A stretch of 56,938 nt of DNA, counting the filler, from Dugesia japonica (taxonomy: Eukaryota), in the NCBI GenBank assembly GCA_001938525.1. It is 5 parts of 5 records of this genome, joined end to end, with 100 filler letters (N's around TTAATTAATTAA, not from the genome) between each part and the next. Parts side by side here need not be neighbours in the genome. Positions count along the whole stretch, not along the records: positions 1 to 8,835 come from MQRL01556183.1; 4 more parts are not named here. One strand, 5' to 3'. The position numbers and the translations under genes were made by a program. Of this stretch, positions 1 through 8,835 are shown piece by piece. The notes beneath the pieces were generated by a model. The model was not told the DNA's origin. It did no database searches and saw nothing but the letters and a program-made list of their open reading frames with translations. The first letter of the stretch is position 1. Every line of letters begins with the position of its first letter.

Positions 1-980
1 TATGTAAATCAACGGAAGTTTGTAAGCATATGTGGATTAATTATGTATTTTATTATTGCAATGATATGTATATTTTATATATTAAGAGAATTTAGTGTAT
101 TAACATATATAGATTTCATTGAATTATTTGCGTTGTATGGACTTATATGTATTACGGTTAATTGTATGAACTGTTTTATTGATTACATTGTGTTTGTTGT
201 ACGATTTTATTGACTATATTGGTTTTTATTGATATTTAGTAACTTCCTTAAAATATTTTATGGACATTCAGTAATTTTTTAAAAATATTTTAGATCAATC
301 TAGTAAATCTTTGAAAACTTTTAATCAACATCATTAAAATATGCAAAAAACAAATTACATGTAANNNNNNNNNNNNNNNNNNNNNNNNNNNNNNNNNNNN
401 NNNNNNNNNNNNNNTAAATCAACGGAAGTTTGTAAGCATATGTGGATTAATTATGTATTTTATTATTGCAATGATATGTATATTGTATATATTAAGAGAA
501 TTTAGTGTATTAACATATATAGATTTCATTGAATTATTTGCATTATATGGACTTATACGTATTAGGGTTAATTGTATGAACTGTTTTATTGATTACATTG
601 TGTTTGTTGTACGATTTTAATGATCATATTGGTTTTTATTGATATTTAGTACCTTCCTTAAAATATTTTATGGGCATTAAGTAATTTTTTAAAAATATTC
701 TAGATCAATCTAGTAAATCTTTGAAAACTTTTAATCAACATCATTAAAATATGCAAAAAACAAATTACATGTAAACCGAGGCCATTATACTTGGGCAATA
801 CAAACACNAGTTAATTAAAGATAGAGCAACACGAATGCAAGTACACAAATTTATTACTACAAATGGTCCATTTGTGTTTTTATGATATTTTAGAGTTTAA
901 TAGGGTTTTCTAAAATTTTTATGATTTTATATGGTTCTTTAGGGTTTTTATAAGGTATTTATAAGGTTTTGTAGAATTTA
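1..980. repeat. Tandemly duplicated ~410-bp AT-rich repeat (1-364 and 415-774, around an N gap) plus flank; left arm of a long inverted repeat
   Basis: 1-364 and 415-774 are near identical (possibly an assembly duplication across the gap). About 500-980 recurs reverse-complemented at about 1895-2411, and 1-40 recurs inverted at about 1060-1100. Confidence 0.8.
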
Positions 981-1894
981 TTTGACATCCATAGAATTAT
1001 ATATATTATATTGAGTTTTATTGTACAATGTAAATATCATTTTATTAATAAAATACACAAAGTCCATATATGCTTGCAAACCTCGGTTGATTTACATATA
1101 AATTTCATTTATATGTAACACACCTCAAACATTTTATTTATTATTTACTGATAATATAGTATACTTGTCACCATTAATACATGTTTATTCGTTTTTAACA
1201 CCAAAGTGATGACATTGATCGTATACGATCCAAGAGTTTTCATGTATATTGAAATTTACATTAAACGTTTTATTTTAAATTTTATTAGTTTATTGATTGT
1301 ATAAATAAATAAAAAATATATTTGTCCTCTTTATTTTCATTTAAAAATTTTCTGGTCACCAACGATCGATTTTGTAAGTTATTTTTAACAAAAAAACATT
1401 TAATTCCGGGGTTAAATTTTATTGTTAACTCTCAATTATAAATTTCATTTTCCATAAATTGTCAATTTTTTCTAATTTATAAATTAACTGATTAATTTTT
1501 AATTTTAATAAGTGTTGAATTTCTCATACAGGCAGACAAAATTTCATTAACCACTCATTCCTATTTACGCGCTCATGATTTATTTATATATTTACAATTT
1601 AATTTTTCTTCATTTTAATTTATTATTAATTCATTTGTTTCTTATTTAGTATACCTAATAAAATTGAGTGAGATTTCAATTAGGATATCATATTAAATTT
1701 TATATTTTAAGAATTAAATTTTTTTCAACTAAAATTGATTCAATCTATTTTCAATATAAGTTTTCAACAGTTTTTAAAATTTTATTGTATTTTATTATTA
1801 TATTTTTATATTTTAAATTTTAAATAAATTTATAATCGAAACTAGTAATCATTAAAATAATAATAACAATAAAAAATAATAATAATAAATAACT

Positions 1895-2411
1895 TATAAA
1901 AACCCATAGAATTATATAAAACCATACATTAAACTCTAAAATATCATAAAAACCCGAATGAACCCTTTGTAAAAATACTTTTATGTACTTGCATTCGTAC
2001 TACATTGTCTTTGTTCTAGTTGCATTCGTTTTTTTTGCACAAGTATAACTCTCGCTCTTTGTTTACTTGCACTCGTATTGCATCATCTTTGTTTAAATCG
2101 CATTTGTGTTGCTCAAGTGTAACTCATGCCCCTAGATTACATGTAATTTGTTTTTTGCAAATTTTAATGATGTTGATTAAAATTTTTCAAAGATTTACTA
2201 GATTTATCTAAAATATTATAAAAAATTACTGAATGTCCATAAAATATTTTAAGGAAGTTACTAAATATCAATAAAAACCAATATAGTCATTAAAATCATA
2301 CAATTAACACAATACACTCAAAGAAAACATTTCATACAATTAACCGTAATACATATAAGTCCATACAACGCAAAGAATCCGATGAAATCTTTATACGTTA
2401 ATACACTAAAT
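1895..2411 (-). repeat. Inverted copy of the 500-980 repeat (foldback/MITE-like arm)
   Basis: For example ttacatgtaatttgttttttgcaaattttaatgatgttgattaaaatttttcaaagatttacta (~2138-2200) is the near-exact reverse complement of ~711-774. Confidence 0.8.
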
Positions 2412-2499
2412 AAACCTAATATGATAACTGAAATGAAATAATAAACCTAACAGAGCTAGTTACATCATATAATAAACCCAATAAAATCACTAGATCAAT

Positions 2500-2502
<3 letters not shown>

Positions 2503-2548
<46 letters not shown>

Positions 2549-2637
2549 TAAAAATAATAATAAAAATAATAANNNNNNNNNNNNNNNNNNNNNNNNNNNN
2601 NNNNNNNNNNNNNNNNNNNNNNATAATAATAATAATA
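2503..2637. repeat. (AAT)n microsatellite spanning an N gap
   Basis: Seen directly; explains the poly-Ile ORF 2490-2702. Confidence 0.95.
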
Positions 2638-4097
2638 AAAAATATTAAACTAATAAATATGGTATTCATATTTCGATTGCTAATTGTTGTTACAGAATTC
2701 AAATTAAATAATAAAATTATAAAAAATTGTCATAACATTAGTTTTGATTTGAATATTCTATTGTAAATACGAAACTAACCAAGTAAACTGAGAAAATTAT
2801 AAAATTAATTTTACAAAAATTGATAAAAACTATTGTCTAATTCAATTGAACTGAACAAAATTAAAATTTTCGACATTAATAATGAATAAGCGTTTCTATA
2901 GTTAACAGAAAATATTTTTAAAAAAAAAGTGACAAAAGATATTTCTCGCTTCCAATAAAACTCTATATAAAAAGCTGGAAGTTTTCTTTTATATTCGTAT
3001 TTCCATATATAATTCGATTTGGGAAGTGATAACTCATTAGTTATGACATACTAATTCAATAATAAACTGCATATTGAATTTGGTAGCTGGAATTACGACA
3101 TTAATTAATCATTGAAGAGAGAAGTTTCTTTTTATCAGAAATGACAGCTTTTTTTAGGAATACAACAGTAATTTTCCATCAAGAACTTCAATATTTTATT
3201 ATCGTTTATCGCCAACTTCAATAAAGTTCTGTTTCTATTTAATACACAGTATTCAATATCTCAACAACATTTGAAGAAAATTGACAACTTACAATTGTGT
3301 ACTTCGCTTTTGTTATTTGTTATGAGGAGTAATATTTTTTTACATGTTTCATTGTTTTTGTTAACTTATAACAATTTCTTTTAGTATAATCGTATCCAAT
3401 GAAATGTTTGAAGTAATTAATTTTTGTGGAATTCTTTGGTTTTTTTTTCGATAATTATTTTTATTTTGATAATATTTTCCACATTATTTTAACTAGGGCT
3501 TATTTTTGAGGAGGGTTTATATTCCGAAAAAGACGGTATCACTATATAAAGATTAAAAAGCAAGTACCATAACATAATTTATACCTTTATGTTACAGATA
3601 TTAACATTAAATTACACCTATATTAGTTTATTTAAAATCTTCCTACTTTGAAAATTCTTAACAATTAATTTTAATTTAATAACAAAGGCTTTTGAAGTTT
3701 CTTGTGGCAGCAATTAACAATTTTATTATTAACAAAGCCATGAAAATGAACTTTTAAGTCTTCAACCAGACTTGGTAAACTCGGTTCAGAAATTCGAAAA
3801 ACTATGGAAAGATCACTAATAAAGATAAAGAAACGAAATAATTTTTGGAAGAAGCGGATTAAACTTATAACAACAACACTCATAAAATTTTGCCTAGACG
3901 GTTTTAACATCAGTTATGAAAGAGATATTATTGCGTCAATATGAAATTATATTCCTATGATGATAAAGTATGGTAATATTGCTGAGAATTTTAAAAATCG
4001 AGTTCATGTTTTGGTTATATATATATATATATATATAAGTAGATATAGGTAGTTACTATCCTAGTCACGTAGTCAAATGCAATATTTTAGATTTATT

Positions 4098-4475
4098 AAA
4101 AAGTGCCATTTTAAGCGAAGCCGCAATATGGCAACTTATGACAAGATTTCAATGTAAAATGTAATAAAATATAGTAAAAAGAGTGTAATATAATAATAAA
4201 AATACCATTTTAGCAAAACCGCAATATGGTGACTCATTACAAGATTTAAATTAAAAATGTAATGATTTAAAAATAAAATGCCATATTTGGCAAATTATTA
4301 CCAATTTTACTACTTTCCCCATAGGGAAGTAACGATCTTGGACAGGTAGTCAACTCAGAAATACTGCTATTATTATTACTACTGATTAATGATTATTAGT
4401 AGTAATTATCAGTAGTAATGATTATTATTACTGATTAATGATTATTATCAGTAGTAATTATCAGTAGTAATTATC

Positions 4476-4524
<49 letters not shown>

Positions 4525-4584
4525 AAAAATATTATGATTACCCCCCCACCTATAGGAAAGTAGCGATCTTGGACAGGTAGTCAA
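4098..4584 (+). repeat. Repeat-rich region upstream of pPolB, probable Polinton terminal/sub-terminal region: ~65-bp direct repeats (4098-4165, 4198-4263), 33-bp direct repeats (4321-4353, 4552-4584), TAC/AGT hairpins and (AGT)16 at 4476-4523
   Basis: ATAGGGAAGTAACGATCTTGGACAGGTAGTCAA vs ATAGGAAAGTAGCGATCTTGGACAGGTAGTCAA (2 mismatches); ATTACTACTGAT/ATCAGTAGTAAT inverted pair. Polinton termini are known to begin with short AG/AGT tandem repeats. The assignment as a terminus is inference. Confidence 0.55.
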
Positions 4585-4649
4585 TCCTAATTTTCATAAA
4601 ATATTTTAAAGAGGTAATAAGAGGTGTGAGTAAATTTATCCTATAGAAA

Positions 4650-5852
4650 ATGGCTACAGCATTAACTACACTAAGAACAATACCACTTAAATGTTGGAAA
4701 TGTAAATTAAGTTTTAAAAATGCCACAGGGTTATTAAGTCATCTTAAATCAAAATCATGTACAAGACCTAAAGATAAAAATTTTAGTTGTGAAAAATGTT
4801 TGAAAAGATTTGAAANAGAATCTGGATTAATGAAGCATAAAAAGTCATCAAAATGTTGGAATCCAATTGATGTGAGTTTACGTTGTGACATTTGTAATAA
4901 AACTTTCAAAAGACAAGATCAAGCTAAAATACATTTTAATGGGGATGAACATAAAAATAAAGTTAGAAGAAATCTACAATTACAACAAATTCAACAATTA
5001 CAACAACAACAAGAAAATGAACTTGAAGTACCCGAACCCGAACCATCAATAACACCAACATTGGAAAATTTATTTAACATTGAAGCATATAATGATTTTG
5101 AAATTCAAATTGGATTAAATTCAATATTGATAATGACAAAGGATATTAGTGAAAGAAATTCACAATCAATTTTGGATTTTCGGCAAGAGATTACAACTAT
5201 TGCAAAAAAAGTTTATGAGAGTCAGGGTAAATACAAATTCCGAATAGTTGCAAATGGAGTATATAGTAAAGAAACTGCCACAGCTGTTTTCCATTCTTAT
5301 TCTAATAATAATATTGTTTATATAAAAAGGAAAATTCCAAATGTTGTAGAGATGGCACTAAAAAATTTACAAANATTTATTAGACATGAAGCTAGAAATG
5401 AATCAAATTGGAATTTAGATTATATTAGAGATTATACAATTGAATTTGTGAGATATGAATCAACAGTTGGGGGTACATATCGAGAATTACCATTTGTAAA
5501 AAATGGGTTAGTTAATATAAAAAATAATGATGATAACTGTTTCTTATATTCCGTATTGGCGCATAGGCATCTAATAAATCTTCATCCAGAACGTGTAAGT
5601 AATTACAAACCATATTTATCAGAATTAATAATAAAAGATTTAAAATTTCCAATGGAAATAGATGATATAAAAAAATTTGAAAAATTAAATAATTGGGAAA
5701 TAAATGTTTTTGAATTAGATAGAAATCAAAAAATAACACCACTTAGAATTAAACATTTTGAGACAAAAACCAATTCTGAAGAAAATAAATGTAATTTACT
5801 AATTTATAAAAATCATTATCTATTATGTAGAGATGTTAATGTTTTTGCATGA
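4650..5852 (+). CDS. N-terminal part of a Polinton/adintovirus-type protein-primed DNA polymerase B: three C2H2-type zinc fingers, Gln/Glu-Pro linker and conserved pPolB N-terminal domain
   Basis: CWKC..F.....L..H, CEKC..F.....L..H and CDIC..F......IH....H fingers. GGTYRELP...LVNIKNNDDNCFLYSVLAH and LKFPMEIDDIKKFEKLN..EINVF...CNLLIYKNHY match the N-terminal region of animal Polinton-type PolBs. Ends at TGA 5850-5852, just before an A10 run. Confidence 0.85.
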   Translation: MATALTTLRTIPLKCWKCKLSFKNATGLLSHLKSKSCTRPKDKNFSCEKCLKRFEXESGLMKHKKSSKCWNPIDVSLRCDICNKTFKRQDQAKIHFNGDEHKNKVRRNLQLQQIQQLQQQQENELEVPEPEPSITPTLENLFNIEAYNDFEIQIGLNSILIMTKDISERNSQSILDFRQEITTIAKKVYESQGKYKFRIVANGVYSKETATAVFHSYSNNNIVYIKRKIPNVVEMALKNLQXFIRHEARNESNWNLDYIRDYTIEFVRYESTVGGTYRELPFVKNGLVNIKNNDDNCFLYSVLAHRHLINLHPERVSNYKPYLSELIIKDLKFPMEIDDIKKFEKLNNWEINVFELDRNQKITPLRIKHFETKTNSEENKCNLLIYKNHYLLCRDVNVFA

Positions 5853-5866
5853 AATAAAAAAAAAAT

Positions 5867-7786
5867 TTGTGTTTAGGTTGTATGAATGTTTATCATAGTA
5901 AAAAATTATTAGAAAAACATCAAACAGAATGCATCCACCATGAACCCGCAAAAGTTTCATTTCCACATGATGATTATTATGAATTTAAAGATTTTGATTA
6001 TATGAATAAAGTTCCATTTGCACTTTATGCGGATTATGAAACTTACACTGATACCACCACTAAAAAACATAAACCATTATGTTTAGGAATTCAAATTGTA
6101 AGTGCATATCCAGATTTAATCCAAAATAGGTATATTAGATTTACGGGTGAAGATCTTATTGAAAAATTTTTTAAATTTCTAAAAGAGTTTGATGAACGGG
6201 TTGAAAAAATTAAGGAGGAAAAATTAATAAAAATTTACACTGGAACTGATCACCCAGAATTCATCCCAAATCAAGATTGTAGATATTGTGAGAAACCACT
6301 ACTTGGTAATGTAGTGAGTAGTGAGCCAGGTAGTGAGCCAGGTAGTGAGTCAGGTAGTGAGTCAGAAAGTAGTAGTGAGGTAAGCAGTAGTAGTGAGTCA
6401 GGTAGTGAGCCAGGTAGTGAGTCAGAAAGTAGTAGTGAGTCGGGTAGTGAGTCAGGTAGTGAGTCAGGTAGTGAGTCAGAAAGTGTAGTGGGTAGTGTAG
6501 TAGGTAGTGATCAGTCAGGTAGTGCAGTAGTAATTGATCATGATCATTTTAATGAAAAATTTCGTGGCTATGCACATCGAGCTTGTAATCTTAATGATCG
6601 ATCAATAAAAAATTTATTCGTCCCACTTTATTTTCACAATGGAGCCGGATATGATAACCATTTATTTTTTAAGGAATTAATGGCAAAATATCCCAAGGAT
6701 ATTAAAAAATTAATACCACATTCCGATGAAGAATACATTTCCTTCCATTATAGAAAAATTAGGTTCCTGGATTCTAATAAATTATGCCCATTCACACCAG
6801 TAGAAAAAATGGCTAAAATATTATTAAAAATAAAAAAATATCCAATTACTAAATCTCATGGATTATTCCCAAGGAAAGCTTTCTATCCCTACTCATATGT
6901 TAAGGGGAAAGATTTTAATGAGGTTCAAGAATTATTAAAAAGAGATTACACCCCAACAAAAGAAGATTTCTATAACGATTTAAAAGAAGCCCCAATGACC
7001 CCAAACGATTATGAACAATTTTTAAAGGACTACAACAAAATGAAAACTGTGGGGACCCAGACAATAAAGAAATTTAAAAATATATTAGAATACACCCTTT
7101 ATTACAATAGGTTGGACGTCACCATCCTAGCTGATTTTATAGAAATACTTAGGGATAATTCTCTAAAGTATTATAAAATAGATCCGTGCTATTGTTATAC
7201 AGCCCCAAGCTTAACGTGGAAAGCAGGAATGAGATTTACTAAAGCAAAACTAAAATATGCGAAACCATGGACTTATGATATATTTTTAATGATAGAACGA
7301 GGGATTCGTGGGGGCTATTCCGGATTATGCGGTAGCAGATTGGTATTGCCATTTAGGAATAAATCACTATATAAAATGTTTACTAAAGATCAAGTAGAAG
7401 AAATGCGAAAGGCGGCACGTCAAGGAAAATCAATAGATCATTATTTTAGAGAATCATTTTTAAAATACATTGATGCAAATTCATTATATGCAAGTGCAAT
7501 GATAATGGCATTATCAACAGGTGAAATAACTATGTCTCCAAATTTAATGTATGAACCTTCAACTGAGACAATGAATTATCTTTATGAAGTTGACTTAGAA
7601 TACCCACCAGAAATTCATAATAAGACATTTGATTATCCATTGGCTCCAGAAATATTAAATATTAGAGAAGACATGTTAGGTCCTTATCAAAAATCATTTA
7701 AAAAGAAATTACCAAAAGAAAATAAAAAACTTACATTAAATCAATATGATAAAAAAAATTATGTTGTCCTTGGTTCAACACTAGAT
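5867..7786 (+). CDS. Protein-primed DNA polymerase B, middle part: Zn finger, 3'-5' exonuclease, endonuclease-VII-like insertion and polymerase motif A
   Basis: CLGC...H...C finger; ExoI LYADYETY; EndoVII-like CRYC...DHDH...FRGYAHRACN; ExoII YFHNGAGYDNH; ExoIII YNRLDV; ERGIRGG; motif A YIDANSLYASAM; YEVDLEYPPEIH..DYPLAPE. Runs into the N gap 7787-8046, which would contain motif B. Confidence 0.92.
6311..6526 (+). repeat. In-frame coding minisatellite (GGTAGTGAGTCA/CCA 12-mer and AGT-derived units) encoding ~72 aa of SE(P/S)G repeats
   Basis: Seen directly. It lies between CRYCEKPL and VIDHDH of the EndoVII-like domain and the reading frame is preserved. Confidence 0.95.
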
Positions 7787-8048
7787 NNNNNNNNNNNNNN
7801 NNNNNNNNNNNNNNNNNNNNNNNNNNNNNNNNNNNNNNNNNNNNNNNNNNNNNNNNNNNNNNNNNNNNNNNNNNNNNNNNNNNNNNNNNNNNNNNNNNNN
7901 NNNNNNNNNNNNNNNNNNNNNNNNNNNNNNNNNNNNNNNNNNNNNNNNNNNNNNNNNNNNNNNNNNNNNNNNNNNNNNNNNNNNNNNNNNNNNNNNNNNN
8001 NNNNNNNNNNNNNNNNNNNNNNNNNNNNNNNNNNNNNNNNNNNNNNTT

Positions 8049-8252
8049 AGATGTAAAGTATTTACTAGGGATAATGAACAAGTTGCGCAAGTTGCGGCAA
8101 TGCATATGCGCAAACCAAATTTAGTATATAACAAATTTCAATATATTGGTTTCATGGTTTTAGAACATGCCAAGGCAATAATGTACAATTACGTTTACAA
8201 TATAATGTTACCACTAATAGGAAGAGAAAATTATAATATTCATTATTCAGAT
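8049..8252 (+). CDS. pPolB polymerase domain up to motif C (N-extein ending ...HYSD)
   Basis: NKFQYIGFMVLEHAKAIMY...HYSD aligns with NKPIYIGFGILELSQLHMY...IYSDTDS of the second copy at 46400-46642. The frame is open from the gap edge (RCKVFTRDNEQVAQVAAMHMRK). Confidence 0.9.
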
Positions 8253-8835
8253 AGTGTAACAGCTGACACCCCAATATTAATAAGGGAACTTGGTGAGAAA
8301 CCTCAAATTAAAATGATATTAGAAATTTCTGAAGATTTTAAAGAAAGATTAGATGGAAAGGAATATGCAGAAATAGAAAATTATGAAATATGGGCCCAAA
8401 GTGGATGGGTAAAATTAAAGAAAGTAATTAGACATTTTACCAATAAAAAGATTTATAGAGTTATTACAAAAATGGGGATCGTAGATGTAACAGAAGATCA
8501 TTCATTATTAGATGAAAATGGTAAACAAATAAAACCCGGGGATTTAACGAATGAAACTAAATTACTTCATAATAGAATTTTTAAATTACATAATGAGAAT
8601 TACTATCATGGTGTAAATAAAATAATAAGAGATAAGTGGAGTCTTGCAAAATTATACTACATGGGATTATCATTAGGGATGAATTTAATTATTGTAGAAG
8701 AAGATGGAGGATTTAATATTTTGGAATCAAAAGAAAATATAGTAGAAAATGTAGTACAAAGTGTTAGATTTTTAAGAGAAGGATTAGAAGATGTTTATGA
8801 TATTGAAACTGAAGATGGATCCTTTAATTGTGGAT
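8253..8835 (+). mobile_element. Intein (Hint domain; mini-intein with remnant of homing endonuclease) inserted in PolB motif C, truncated by the contig end
   Basis: Starts with Ser directly after YSD. Block A SVTADTPILIR; W..SGWVKLKKVIRH.T.KKIYRV; block B VDVTEDHSLL (TxxH); block F EDVYDIETEDGSFNCG. 194 aa are visible; block G and the +1 Thr are not in the assembly. Confidence 0.9.

What the first reader, a model, noticed from the sequence alone, without database searches (positions are those of the whole stretch)
8253..8835. The intein looks giant-virus-derived and has lost most of its homing endonuclease
Seen: only about 55-60 aa separate the N-terminal splicing region (ending KLLH) from the C-terminal region, with no LAGLIDADG blocks C/E, although SLAKLYYMGLSLGMNLII resembles a residual block H. 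From recall, SVT.DTP, W...GW.K.K.VIRH.T.KKIYRV.T..G..DVTEDHSLL and VYD.ETE.GSF..G closely follow the Mimiviridae-type PolB intein at the same site. Inference: the intein crossed from an RNA-primed NCLDV PolB to a protein-primed PolB, which implies co-infection or a virophage-like association, and then decayed to a mini-intein.
Basis: partly seen in the sequence, partly recalled or inferred. Interest (0 to 1): 0.75.

Follow-up and report, generated by a model that had tools for sequence, protein, structure and literature searches.

The report
Giant-virus-type mini-intein in polinton polymerase
A self-splicing protein insert (intein) of the family that fills giant-virus DNA polymerases sits at the matching active-site position of a polinton-type protein-primed polymerase, which shows that giant viruses and polinton-like elements have exchanged DNA.

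Summary
From base 8253 to the piece's edge, an intein interrupts motif C of a polinton-type protein-primed family-B polymerase (pPolB). It starts with Ser straight after "HYSD". NCBIfam recognises the N-terminal splicing region, the AlphaFold2 model is a confident HINT fold, and the best PDB matches are inteins.

Its nearest relatives (E down to 1e-37, 40-52% identity) are inteins split as YGD|...|TDS in classical RNA-primed PolBs. Those sit on giant-virus-like contigs, GVMAG contigs and named Nucleocytoviricota such as Megavirus, Klosneuvirus, Heterosigma akashiwo virus, and pithovirus- and marseillevirus-like MAGs. None of the 150 best protein hits or the 80 IMG/VR loci is a pPolB. The extein matches only polinton-type pPolBs, and the nearest one that can be read across motif C has an uninterrupted YTDTDS.

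The endonuclease core is absent. One helix plus a hairpin remains, and it aligns with the end of the LAGLIDADG domain of longer relatives.

Decay after the crossing is not shown, because mini forms of the same layout are common in giant-virus PolBs. I found a second pPolB-borne intein (L006/L007, about 339 aa, with an endonuclease remnant). It is not clearly sister to this one, so capture may be recurrent. The intein's last residues and the C-extein lie outside the piece.

The parts
4650..8835 (+). Polinton-type protein-primed family-B DNA polymerase gene (pPolB), given as one part. It is interrupted by the intein, broken (one change of reading frame in the readable sequence), holds a 260-N assembly gap and two single N, and is cut by the piece's edge.
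   Evidence: 782 relatives at E<=1e-3, best 8.9e-64, many carrying PF03175 (DNA_pol_B_2) and PF02945. Named examples come from animal genomes; all three readable extein pieces hit these proteins, and both the N-terminal and the polymerase piece align to the single protein P0152. Pfam itself gives no polymerase hit on the window's protein.
4686..4955 (+). C2H2 zinc-finger region at the N-terminus of the pPolB
   Evidence: zf-C2H2 at E=4.1e-9 and zf-met at 5.4e-8. Some pPolB relatives also carry PF00096 (P0154, P0165).
6293..6530 (+). In-frame 12-nt tandem repeat encoding a Ser/Glu/Gly/Pro-rich low-complexity insert in the pPolB
   Evidence: 11 to 18 copies. GC is 47% against about 28% around it. 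This insert swamped the first word search.
6506..6619 (+). Endonuclease-VII-like Zn-binding motif, typical of polinton pPolBs
   Evidence: phrog_423 endonuclease VII, weak at E=3.5e-3. PF02945 is precomputed on many relatives and found on L007's pPolB.
6530..7786 (+). Exonuclease and palm part of the pPolB, up to the assembly gap
   Evidence: 33-42% identity over about 400 aa to PF03175 proteins.
7787..8046 (.). Assembly gap of 260 N inside the gene. It was not filled.
8049..8252 (+). pPolB palm segment running up to motif C (N-extein, ends ...HYSD)
   Evidence: hits 87 of 120 pPolB relatives (51% identity to P0153); no hit to any of the 150 intein-bearing classical PolBs.
8253..8835 (+). Mini-intein, 194 residues visible, cut inside block F. 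By the family pattern about 8 more residues are expected.
8253..8570 (+). N-terminal splicing region (block A with Ser1, block B with T80-x-x-H83), residues 1-106
   Evidence: TIGR01445. S1, H61, K65, T80, D82, H83, L85, P95 and L104 are invariant across 49 family members.
8571..8747 (+). Linker that stands where relatives carry the LAGLIDADG endonuclease: a loop (residues 107-127), then helix 128-140 and hairpin 145-158 (8634-8726)
   Evidence: secondary structure; pLDDT dips to 65 in the loop; in longer relatives the extra domain lies between query residues about 110 and 127; the retained element overlaps their LAGLIDADG_3 / Hom_end matches.
8748..8834 (+). C-terminal splicing region, first part (strands 167-176 and 179-186, block F up to ...FNCG)
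   Evidence: V181, Y182, D183, T186, F191 and G194 are invariant in the family. The block-F form is the 'G-x-F' type, which in relatives goes with ...KN|TDS.

Best explanation
The feature is a class-1-type (Ser1) mini-intein of the family that occupies the pol-c site (YGD|TDS, motif C) of giant-virus RNA-primed family-B polymerases. Here it is inserted at the equivalent Y-S-D| position of motif C in a polinton-type protein-primed polymerase. Shown: the intein identity and fold, the insertion point on the N side, the giant-virus affinity of the intein, the polinton-pPolB affinity of the extein, and the absence of the endonuclease core with a retained C-terminal remnant. Inferred: the intein came horizontally from the giant-virus intein pool. 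Motif C is the one stretch that is nearly the same in both polymerase families (TAT-GGx-GAT|ACx-GAT-TCT against TAT-AGT/TCA/ACA-GAT|ACT-GAT-TCT/AGT), so a LAGLIDADG endonuclease of that family could plausibly cut a pPolB gene present in the same cell, with repair copying the intein in. After translation the intein would excise itself and restore Y-S-D-T-D-S, so the polymerase stays usable. Without its own endonuclease this copy can no longer home by itself. Whether the endonuclease was lost before or after the jump is unresolved.
For: Intein identity. Family and site: one search gives 1683 relatives at E<=1e-3, best 1.7e-37. All 13 hits scanned with Pfam (the top six and seven near neighbours) are PF00136 proteins, and the full-length ones also carry PF03104. 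Flanks in the hits are YGD|S...(H/K)N|TDS. Giant-virus origin of the hits: gene contexts with D5 primase-helicase, topoisomerase II, thymidine kinase, MutS and an 814-kb contig. The best BFVD matches are PolBs of Pithovirus LCPAC302, Marseillevirus LCMAC201, Megavirus courdo11, Heterosigma akashiwo virus 01, Klosneuvirus and Megavirus 'balcon', with TM 0.72-0.88 on six of them and 22-43% identity. IMG/VR holds at least 499 relatives. Of the 80 kept, many are GVMAG contigs; flanks could be read in 78 (YGD in 65, DAD/DQD in 11), and none of the 80 carries a pPolB. Nesting: in 90 of 100 NJ bootstraps the window's sister group is made only of PolB motif-C inteins of the '...KN' subclass. Extein; the intein-free relative L004 reads ...HYTDTDS... 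without interruption. Conservation: the window keeps every invariant and near-invariant family position it covers and has an open frame. Independent second case: L006/L007, a pPolB with ...YSD|S...KN|TDS, next to a Pox_A32-like ATPase. Published context: the Mimivirus PolB intein lies at YGD|TDS as a pol-c allele (PMC549080), and endonuclease insertions in polinton pPolBs have been attributed to intein invasions (PMC11161782).
Against: The last ~8 intein residues, the terminal Asn and the C-extein are outside the piece, so a complete in-frame insertion is not shown for this copy. Identity to the nearest relatives is only 40-52%, so no donor is identified and the event is not recent. The trees are neighbour-joining on about 113 columns. 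The host gene has one frame change, so this copy may be decaying. Block F carries Gly where the canonical subclass has His-His, and in the relatives that share this block-F form the penultimate residue is Lys; the splicing competence of that subclass is inferred only from its abundance in polymerase genes. No other polinton hallmark gene or terminal repeat lies in the piece.
Confidence: 0.78

Rival explanations
1. One reading: the intein entered the pPolB with a working LAGLIDADG endonuclease and lost it afterwards inside the polinton lineage.
For: A pPolB-borne allele of about 339 aa with a weak LAGLIDADG_3 match exists in L006/L007. It shares the block-F motif ...FNCG with the window. The NJ point estimate joins it to the window's intein. 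An intein normally needs an endonuclease to invade a new site.
Against: Support for that grouping is 21 of 100 bootstraps. In the C-terminal part the two have different nearest neighbours. Their pPolB exteins are not sisters. Minis of 190-225 aa with the same linker length and the same retained helix-hairpin are common among the giant-virus relatives, including near neighbours P0013, P0021 and P0001.
Confidence: 0.35
2. One old invasion of a pPolB, followed by spread among polinton lineages and many losses, rather than repeated capture from giant viruses.
For: The insertion point is the same, both flanks read Y-S-D rather than Y-T-D, and both have ...FNCG in block F. The NJ point estimate gives monophyly.
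Against: Bootstrap support is low, the C-terminal neighbours differ, and the exteins are as distant from each other as from intein-free pPolBs. No further pPolB host appears among the 150 best hits or the 80 IMG/VR loci.
Confidence: 0.3
3. The intein is a dead relic: this polinton copy is decaying and the intein no longer splices.
For: There is one frame change in the host gene. Both L006 and L007 copies of the other pPolB-borne intein have disrupted frames. Block F is non-canonical.
Against: All family-invariant residues the window covers are kept. The frame is open over 262 codons in very AT-rich DNA. The same block-F/G subclass sits in 36 of 75 motif-C inteins of giant-virus polymerases, genes those viruses depend on. 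A single frame change could also be an assembly error.
Confidence: 0.25
4. The direction was the reverse: the family arose in pPolBs and moved into giant-virus polymerases.
For: Nothing specific, only that the direction is inferred from distribution.
Against: There are hundreds to thousands of giant-virus hosts at several sites (PolB motif C, PolB motif B, topoisomerase II) against two pPolB lineages, and the window's intein is nested inside the giant-virus clade.
Confidence: 0.04
5. Assembly chimera that joins a giant-virus PolB fragment to a pPolB.
For: A 260-N gap lies about 200 bases upstream of the junction.
Against: The junction itself lies in uninterrupted sequence. The 68 residues before it are pPolB, not classical PolB. 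Composition is even across the junction. The same arrangement occurs independently in L006 and L007.
Confidence: 0.03

Closest known systems
PolB inteins of Nucleocytoviricota at the pol-c site (Mimivirus/Megavirus, Heterosigma akashiwo virus 01, Klosneuvirus, metagenomic pithovirus- and marseillevirus-like genomes)
   Same: Same intein family: up to 43% identity to named examples and 40-46% to metagenomic ones over the full length. Same fold (TM 0.72-0.88). Same Ser1 and the same insertion point after the first Asp of motif C. Same mix of endonuclease-bearing and mini forms (PMC549080).
   Different: The host protein is a protein-primed polinton-type polymerase (PF03175 lineage), not a PF00136/PF03104 polymerase. 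The flank is Y-S-D instead of Y-G-D. The Mimivirus intein is 351 aa with an endonuclease (PMC549080), whereas this one is about 202 aa without the core.
pPolB-borne intein in L006/L007 (ENA sample ERZ25070786), found here
   Same: Host of the same kind (PF03175 + PF02945 pPolB in a polinton-like element). Same site (...YSD|S...). 51-52% identity over the first 110 residues. Same ...FNCG in block F.
   Different: About 339 aa with a weak LAGLIDADG_3 match in the middle, and disrupted frames in both copies. Its C-terminal part and its extein are not close to the window's.
Archaeal pol-c inteins and the Nanoarchaeum equitans split Pol intein (NEQ068, PDB 5oxx)
   Same: Same insertion point in motif C, and Ser as first residue in NEQ068 (PMC549080).
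   Different: Only marginal sequence similarity (E=0.2 against the PDB set), compared with 1e-37 to the giant-virus-type relatives.
Solved mini-inteins (Aes123 PolB1, TFIIB Mvu/Mja, TvoVMA, PolB16 OarG)
   Same: HINT fold of mini-intein size (Foldseek E about 1e-6 to 1e-5).
   Different: 13-18% identity and TM only 0.46-0.57. These lack the helix-hairpin remnant in the same form.
Endonuclease insertions in polinton pPolBs attributed to intein invasions (PMC11161782). From my unverified memory, also an intein reported in a Glomus polinton polymerase by Kapitonov and Jurka (PNAS 2006).
   Same: The same general phenomenon: inteins or homing endonucleases inside polinton polymerases.
   Different: The held paper names neither this site nor a giant-virus origin. 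The 2006 paper is not in the library, so I could not check whether it describes this very element. The 2018 survey of eukaryotic inteins does not list a pPolB or polinton intein in its Table 1 or in the supplementary files searched.

Membership tests
Intein (HINT splicing domain) | N-terminal nucleophile (Cys/Ser) as first residue, block A | tested here: met
   Ser at 8253. TIGR01445 aligns from profile position 2 at the next residue. S1 is invariant in 49 family members.
Intein (HINT splicing domain) | Block B T-x-x-H | tested here: met
   T80-E-D-H83, with T80 and H83 invariant in the family.
Intein (HINT splicing domain) | HINT fold | tested here: met
   AF2 pLDDT 93. All significant PDB matches are inteins.
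Intein (HINT splicing domain) | Block G: terminal Asn followed by a Cys/Ser/Thr +1 residue, with in-frame continuation of the host protein | not testable with these tools
   The piece ends inside block F. Relatives end ...(H/K)N|TDS.
Intein (HINT splicing domain) | Protein splicing actually occurs | not testable with these tools
   Inferred only from conserved residues and the open frame.
Giant-virus PolB pol-c intein allele | Closest relatives are inteins of Nucleocytoviricota PolBs | tested here: met
Giant-virus PolB pol-c intein allele | Insertion between Y-x-D and T-D-S of motif C | tested here: inconclusive
   The N side is met (HYSD|S). The C side lies outside the piece.
Giant-virus PolB pol-c intein allele | Host is an RNA-primed family-B polymerase (PF00136/PF03104) | tested here: not met
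   The extein matches only PF03175-type pPolBs and none of the 150 classical PolBs. It is a homologue of those inteins but not an allele in the strict sense.
LAGLIDADG endonuclease-bearing (full-length) intein | Endonuclease blocks C, D, E (two LAGLIDADG helices) | tested here: not met
   No LAGLIDADG or Hom_end Pfam match. Only about 60 residues lie between the splicing halves, as one helix and one hairpin. Relatives carry 90-220 extra residues there.
Polinton/Maverick protein-primed PolB | [quoted passage not shown] | tested here: met
   Met through homologues, with the layout taken from PMC11161782. The Pfam model itself does not reach the window's protein.
Polinton/Maverick element | Integrase, packaging ATPase, protease, capsid genes and terminal inverted repeats | not testable with these tools
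   None lies in the 8.8-kb piece: 1-4649 has no ORF of 80 aa or more. Relatives L004 and L007 do have Pox_A32-like ATPase genes nearby, and L004 also a DJR capsid gene.
Hedgehog/Hog or bacterial BIL Hint domains | Closest similarity to Hog/BIL domains rather than inteins | tested here: not met
   The only BIL match is weak (E about 6e-3) and ranks far below the inteins. No Hog match is seen.

The most novel reading that the evidence does not exclude
Polinton-like elements have captured giant-virus PolB inteins more than once. Giant-virus intein endonucleases may cut the near-identical motif-C DNA of a co-resident pPolB gene, and carrying the intein would then protect the element's polymerase gene from that cut. 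On this reading the intein is both a molecular record of, and a defence in, conflict between giant viruses and polinton-like elements.
Probability: 0.15. Interest if true: 0.8.

Novelty: new member of a known kind. Interest (0 to 1): 0.5.

Why it matters
Inteins normally move only between alleles of the same gene. Here an intein family typical of giant-virus replicative polymerases sits at the structurally equivalent catalytic motif of a very distant, protein-primed polymerase in a polinton-type element, and a second, independent-looking case exists. That is sequence-level evidence that giant viruses and polinton-like elements have shared a cell and exchanged DNA. It gives a concrete marker (insertions at Y-x-D|T-D-S of pPolB) for charting such contacts across eukaryotic genomes and metagenomes. 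It also bears on the idea that giant-virus homing endonucleases act against competing elements. The caveat is that intein or endonuclease insertions in polinton polymerases are already mentioned in the literature, so this refines a known picture rather than opening a new one.

Tried and rejected
1. Pfam, PHROGs and PDB sequence searches of the polymerase pieces gave no polymerase hit. The first word search failed because the Ser/Glu/Gly repeat took up the words. A search restricted to residues 225-639 solved this.
2. A single-sequence scan of IMG/VR with the intein found nothing. The alignment-based scan found at least 499 relatives.
3. The PDB sequence search of the intein gave only NEQ068 at E=0.2.
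4. I looked for the intein in the nearest pPolB relatives L003, L004 and L008. No intein was found in any of them; only L004 can be read across motif C, where it is uninterrupted.
5. I tested whether the two pPolB-borne inteins form one group. The result is unresolved: 21 of 100 bootstraps, different C-terminal neighbours, and exteins that are not sisters.
6. Literature: the 2006 polinton paper could not be fetched by DOI or PMC id. Other polinton and intein papers mention inteins only in general terms. The 2018 eukaryotic intein survey lists only IF2 and SRP-alpha inteins for Rhizophagus.
7. tRNA and Rfam scans of the piece were empty.
8. The source organism was not identified, and no close paralogue of this locus was found.
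9. Rejected: Hedgehog/BIL affinity, prokaryotic origin of this copy, assembly chimera, and transfer in the reverse direction.

Full report
What is in the window. The piece 1-8835 is very AT-rich, 14-36% GC per 500 bases. Bases 1-4649 hold no ORF of 80 aa or more and consist of repeats. From 4650 to the edge runs one gene on the + strand, and its readable pieces all match polinton-type protein-primed family-B polymerases (pPolB). The restricted word search found 782 relatives at E<=1e-3, the best at 8.9e-64. Many carry PF03175 (DNA_pol_B_2) and PF02945, and the named ones come from animal genomes. The N-terminal piece, the polymerase piece and the 68 residues before the intein all hit these proteins, and the first two align to one and the same relative, P0152. 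This fits the TP-vOTU-EXO-PALM layout described for polinton pPolBs (PMC11161782), here with added C2H2 zinc fingers. Pfam's own polymerase model does not reach the window's protein, so the assignment rests on homologues. In the readable sequence the gene has one change of reading frame. It also has two single-N codons and one 260-N gap, across which the frame relation cannot be known, and it is cut by the edge. I neither bridged nor filled any of these.

The observation. At 8253, directly after ...H-Y-S-D, a Ser opens a 194-residue stretch that runs to the edge without a stop. Chance for the whole 262-codon open stretch at this composition is about 8e-13. NCBIfam's intein N-terminal model matches above its cut-off, with model position 2 on the residue after the Ser. 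An AlphaFold2 model built on 49 family members is confident (pLDDT 93, pTM 0.88), and its best PDB matches are all inteins. Pfam finds no LAGLIDADG or Hom_end domain. In the model the linker is a poorly defined loop (107-127) followed by one helix (128-140) and one hairpin (145-158). The piece ends inside block F (...FNCG). Block G, the terminal Asn and the C-extein cannot be seen.

Whose intein is it. The exhaustive representative search gave 1683 relatives at E<=1e-3 and 946 at <=1e-10, the best at 1.7e-37 and 42% identity over the full length. All 13 hits scanned with Pfam, the six best and seven near neighbours, are classical family-B polymerases with PF00136, and the full-length ones also carry PF03104. 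Several carry more than one intein. None of the 150 listed hits shares any extein similarity with the window. In the hits the intein lies between Y-G-D and T-D-S, the pol-c site described for Mimivirus (PMC549080). The same family also sits at the PolB motif-B site and in topoisomerase II. The hosts are giant viruses. The contigs carry D5 primase-helicase, fused topoisomerase II, thymidine kinase and MutS, with dense intron-less ORFans, and one contig is 814 kb. The best BFVD structural matches are PolBs of Pithovirus LCPAC302, Marseillevirus LCMAC201, Megavirus courdo11, Heterosigma akashiwo virus 01, Klosneuvirus and Megavirus 'balcon' (E 1e-15 to 4e-8, 22-43% identity). An alignment-based scan of IMG/VR found at least 499 relatives. 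Of the 80 kept, many are GVMAG contigs. Flanks could be read in 78 of them: Y-G-D in 65 and D-A/Q-D in 11. None of the 80 has a pPolB. In a neighbour-joining tree of the N-terminal part, the window's sister group consists only of motif-C PolB inteins of the '...KN' subclass in 90 of 100 bootstraps. Archaeal pol-c inteins are far more distant (NEQ068, E=0.2).

The endonuclease. Inteins of this family range continuously from 190 to 420 aa, and about half are minis of 190-225 aa. In the longer ones the extra 90-220 residues lie between window residues about 110 and 127. The segment from about 123-131 to 194 aligns directly upstream of their C-terminus. In P0042 and P0094 the Hom_end and LAGLIDADG_3 matches overlap the part that aligns with the window's helix-hairpin. 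The core (blocks C to E) is gone.

Timing and number of events. The giant-virus minis share the window's linker length and its conserved helix-hairpin, and near neighbours include minis such as P0013, P0021 and P0001. The loss could therefore predate the jump. On the other hand, the last word search turned up P0288 and P0289, which come from two 96%-identical copies (L006, L007) of a polinton-like element in one metagenome. There a PF03175 + PF02945 pPolB, with a Pox_A32-like ATPase nearby, carries an intein at the same place (...Y-S-D|S...). That intein is 51-52% identical to the window's over the first 110 residues, spans about 1018 nt, has a weak LAGLIDADG_3 match in the middle, and ends ...FNCG...KN|TDS. 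Both copies are broken, with at least two frame changes in the L007 polymerase gene and at least five in L006. A longer pPolB-borne allele therefore exists. Whether it stems from the same invasion is unresolved: monophyly with the window's intein gets 21 of 100 bootstraps, the C-terminal parts have different nearest neighbours, and the two pPolB exteins are no closer to each other than to intein-free pPolBs. The nearest relative that can be read across motif C, L004, has an uninterrupted Y-T-D-T-D-S, and no intein was detected in L003 or L008.

Mechanism. Shown: the anatomy above. Established knowledge: inteins excise themselves after translation and rejoin the exteins, and LAGLIDADG endonucleases cut the intein-less allele so that repair copies the intein in. 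Inferred: motif C is the only stretch nearly identical in both polymerase families. The DNA flanks read TAT-GGx-GAT|ACx-GAT-TCT in three giant-virus loci, against TAT-AGT-GAT|ACT-GAT-TCT in L006/L007, CAT-TAT-TCA-GAT| in the window, and TAT-ACA-GAT-ACT-GAT-AGT in the intein-free L004. An endonuclease of the giant-virus family could thus have cut a pPolB gene lying in the same cell. This copy keeps every invariant family residue it covers, so it probably still splices, but it cannot home on its own. Composition is even across the junction, 27% against 29% GC, and identity to the nearest relatives is modest, so the event is not recent. Co-residence with a giant virus follows from this logic but is not tested here.

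Novelty. The Mimivirus-type pol-c intein is long known (PMC549080). Endonuclease insertions in polinton pPolBs have been ascribed to intein invasions (PMC11161782). The 2018 survey of eukaryotic inteins does not list a pPolB or polinton intein in its Table 1 or in the supplementary files searched. From memory only, I believe the original polinton paper (Kapitonov and Jurka, PNAS 2006) reported an intein in a Glomus polinton polymerase. The paper is not held, so I could not check this, and the window's source organism is unidentified. I therefore file this as a new member of a known kind, with moderate interest.

Every motif quoted here comes from tool output or a cited paper. The N- and C-terminal parts of inteins were analysed separately and never concatenated.

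Noticed in passing
window 5-2422: Composite repeat upstream of the gene. A 300-nt direct repeat (5-304 and 415-714, 96% identical) has inverted copies at about 1928-2422 (82-94% complementary), giving a foldback or MITE-like arrangement. Two 50-N gaps lie inside it.
   Followed up: no
window 4369-4524 and 2502-2572: Microsatellites: a 13-nt repeat followed by (AGT)16 just upstream of the polymerase start codon, and an (AAT)n run.
   Followed up: no
window 6293-6530: An in-frame 12-nt tandem repeat inserts a Ser/Glu/Gly/Pro tract into the pPolB just before its endonuclease-VII-like motif. GC is 47% in a roughly 28% GC gene.
   Followed up: partly
proteins P0003, P0007, P0008, P0012, P0014, P0038 and others: The same intein family occupies at least three sites in giant-virus genes: PolB motif C (YGD|TDS), PolB motif B (...SAN|S) and topoisomerase II (D-Q/A-D|...|TDG). 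Some polymerases carry two or three copies.
   Followed up: partly
family-wide: The motif-C inteins split evenly into two block F/G types: H-H-F with ...HN|TDS (36) and G-x-F with ...KN|TDS (36). The window has the second block-F form. Whether a penultimate Lys changes the splicing chemistry is unexplored here.
   Followed up: no
L007 1-19798 and L006 1-11997: Two 96%-identical copies of a polinton-like element carry the second pPolB-borne intein. L007 also has reverse-transcriptase ORFs upstream, a PDDEXK_3 gene and a Pox_A32-like ATPase, which suggests a eukaryotic genomic contig.
   Followed up: partly
L003 2-1543: The nearest pPolB relative (GCA_043755215.1, 2.7-kb contig) has part of the polymerase present on both strands, head to head. 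This is either an inverted duplication or an assembly artefact.
   Followed up: no
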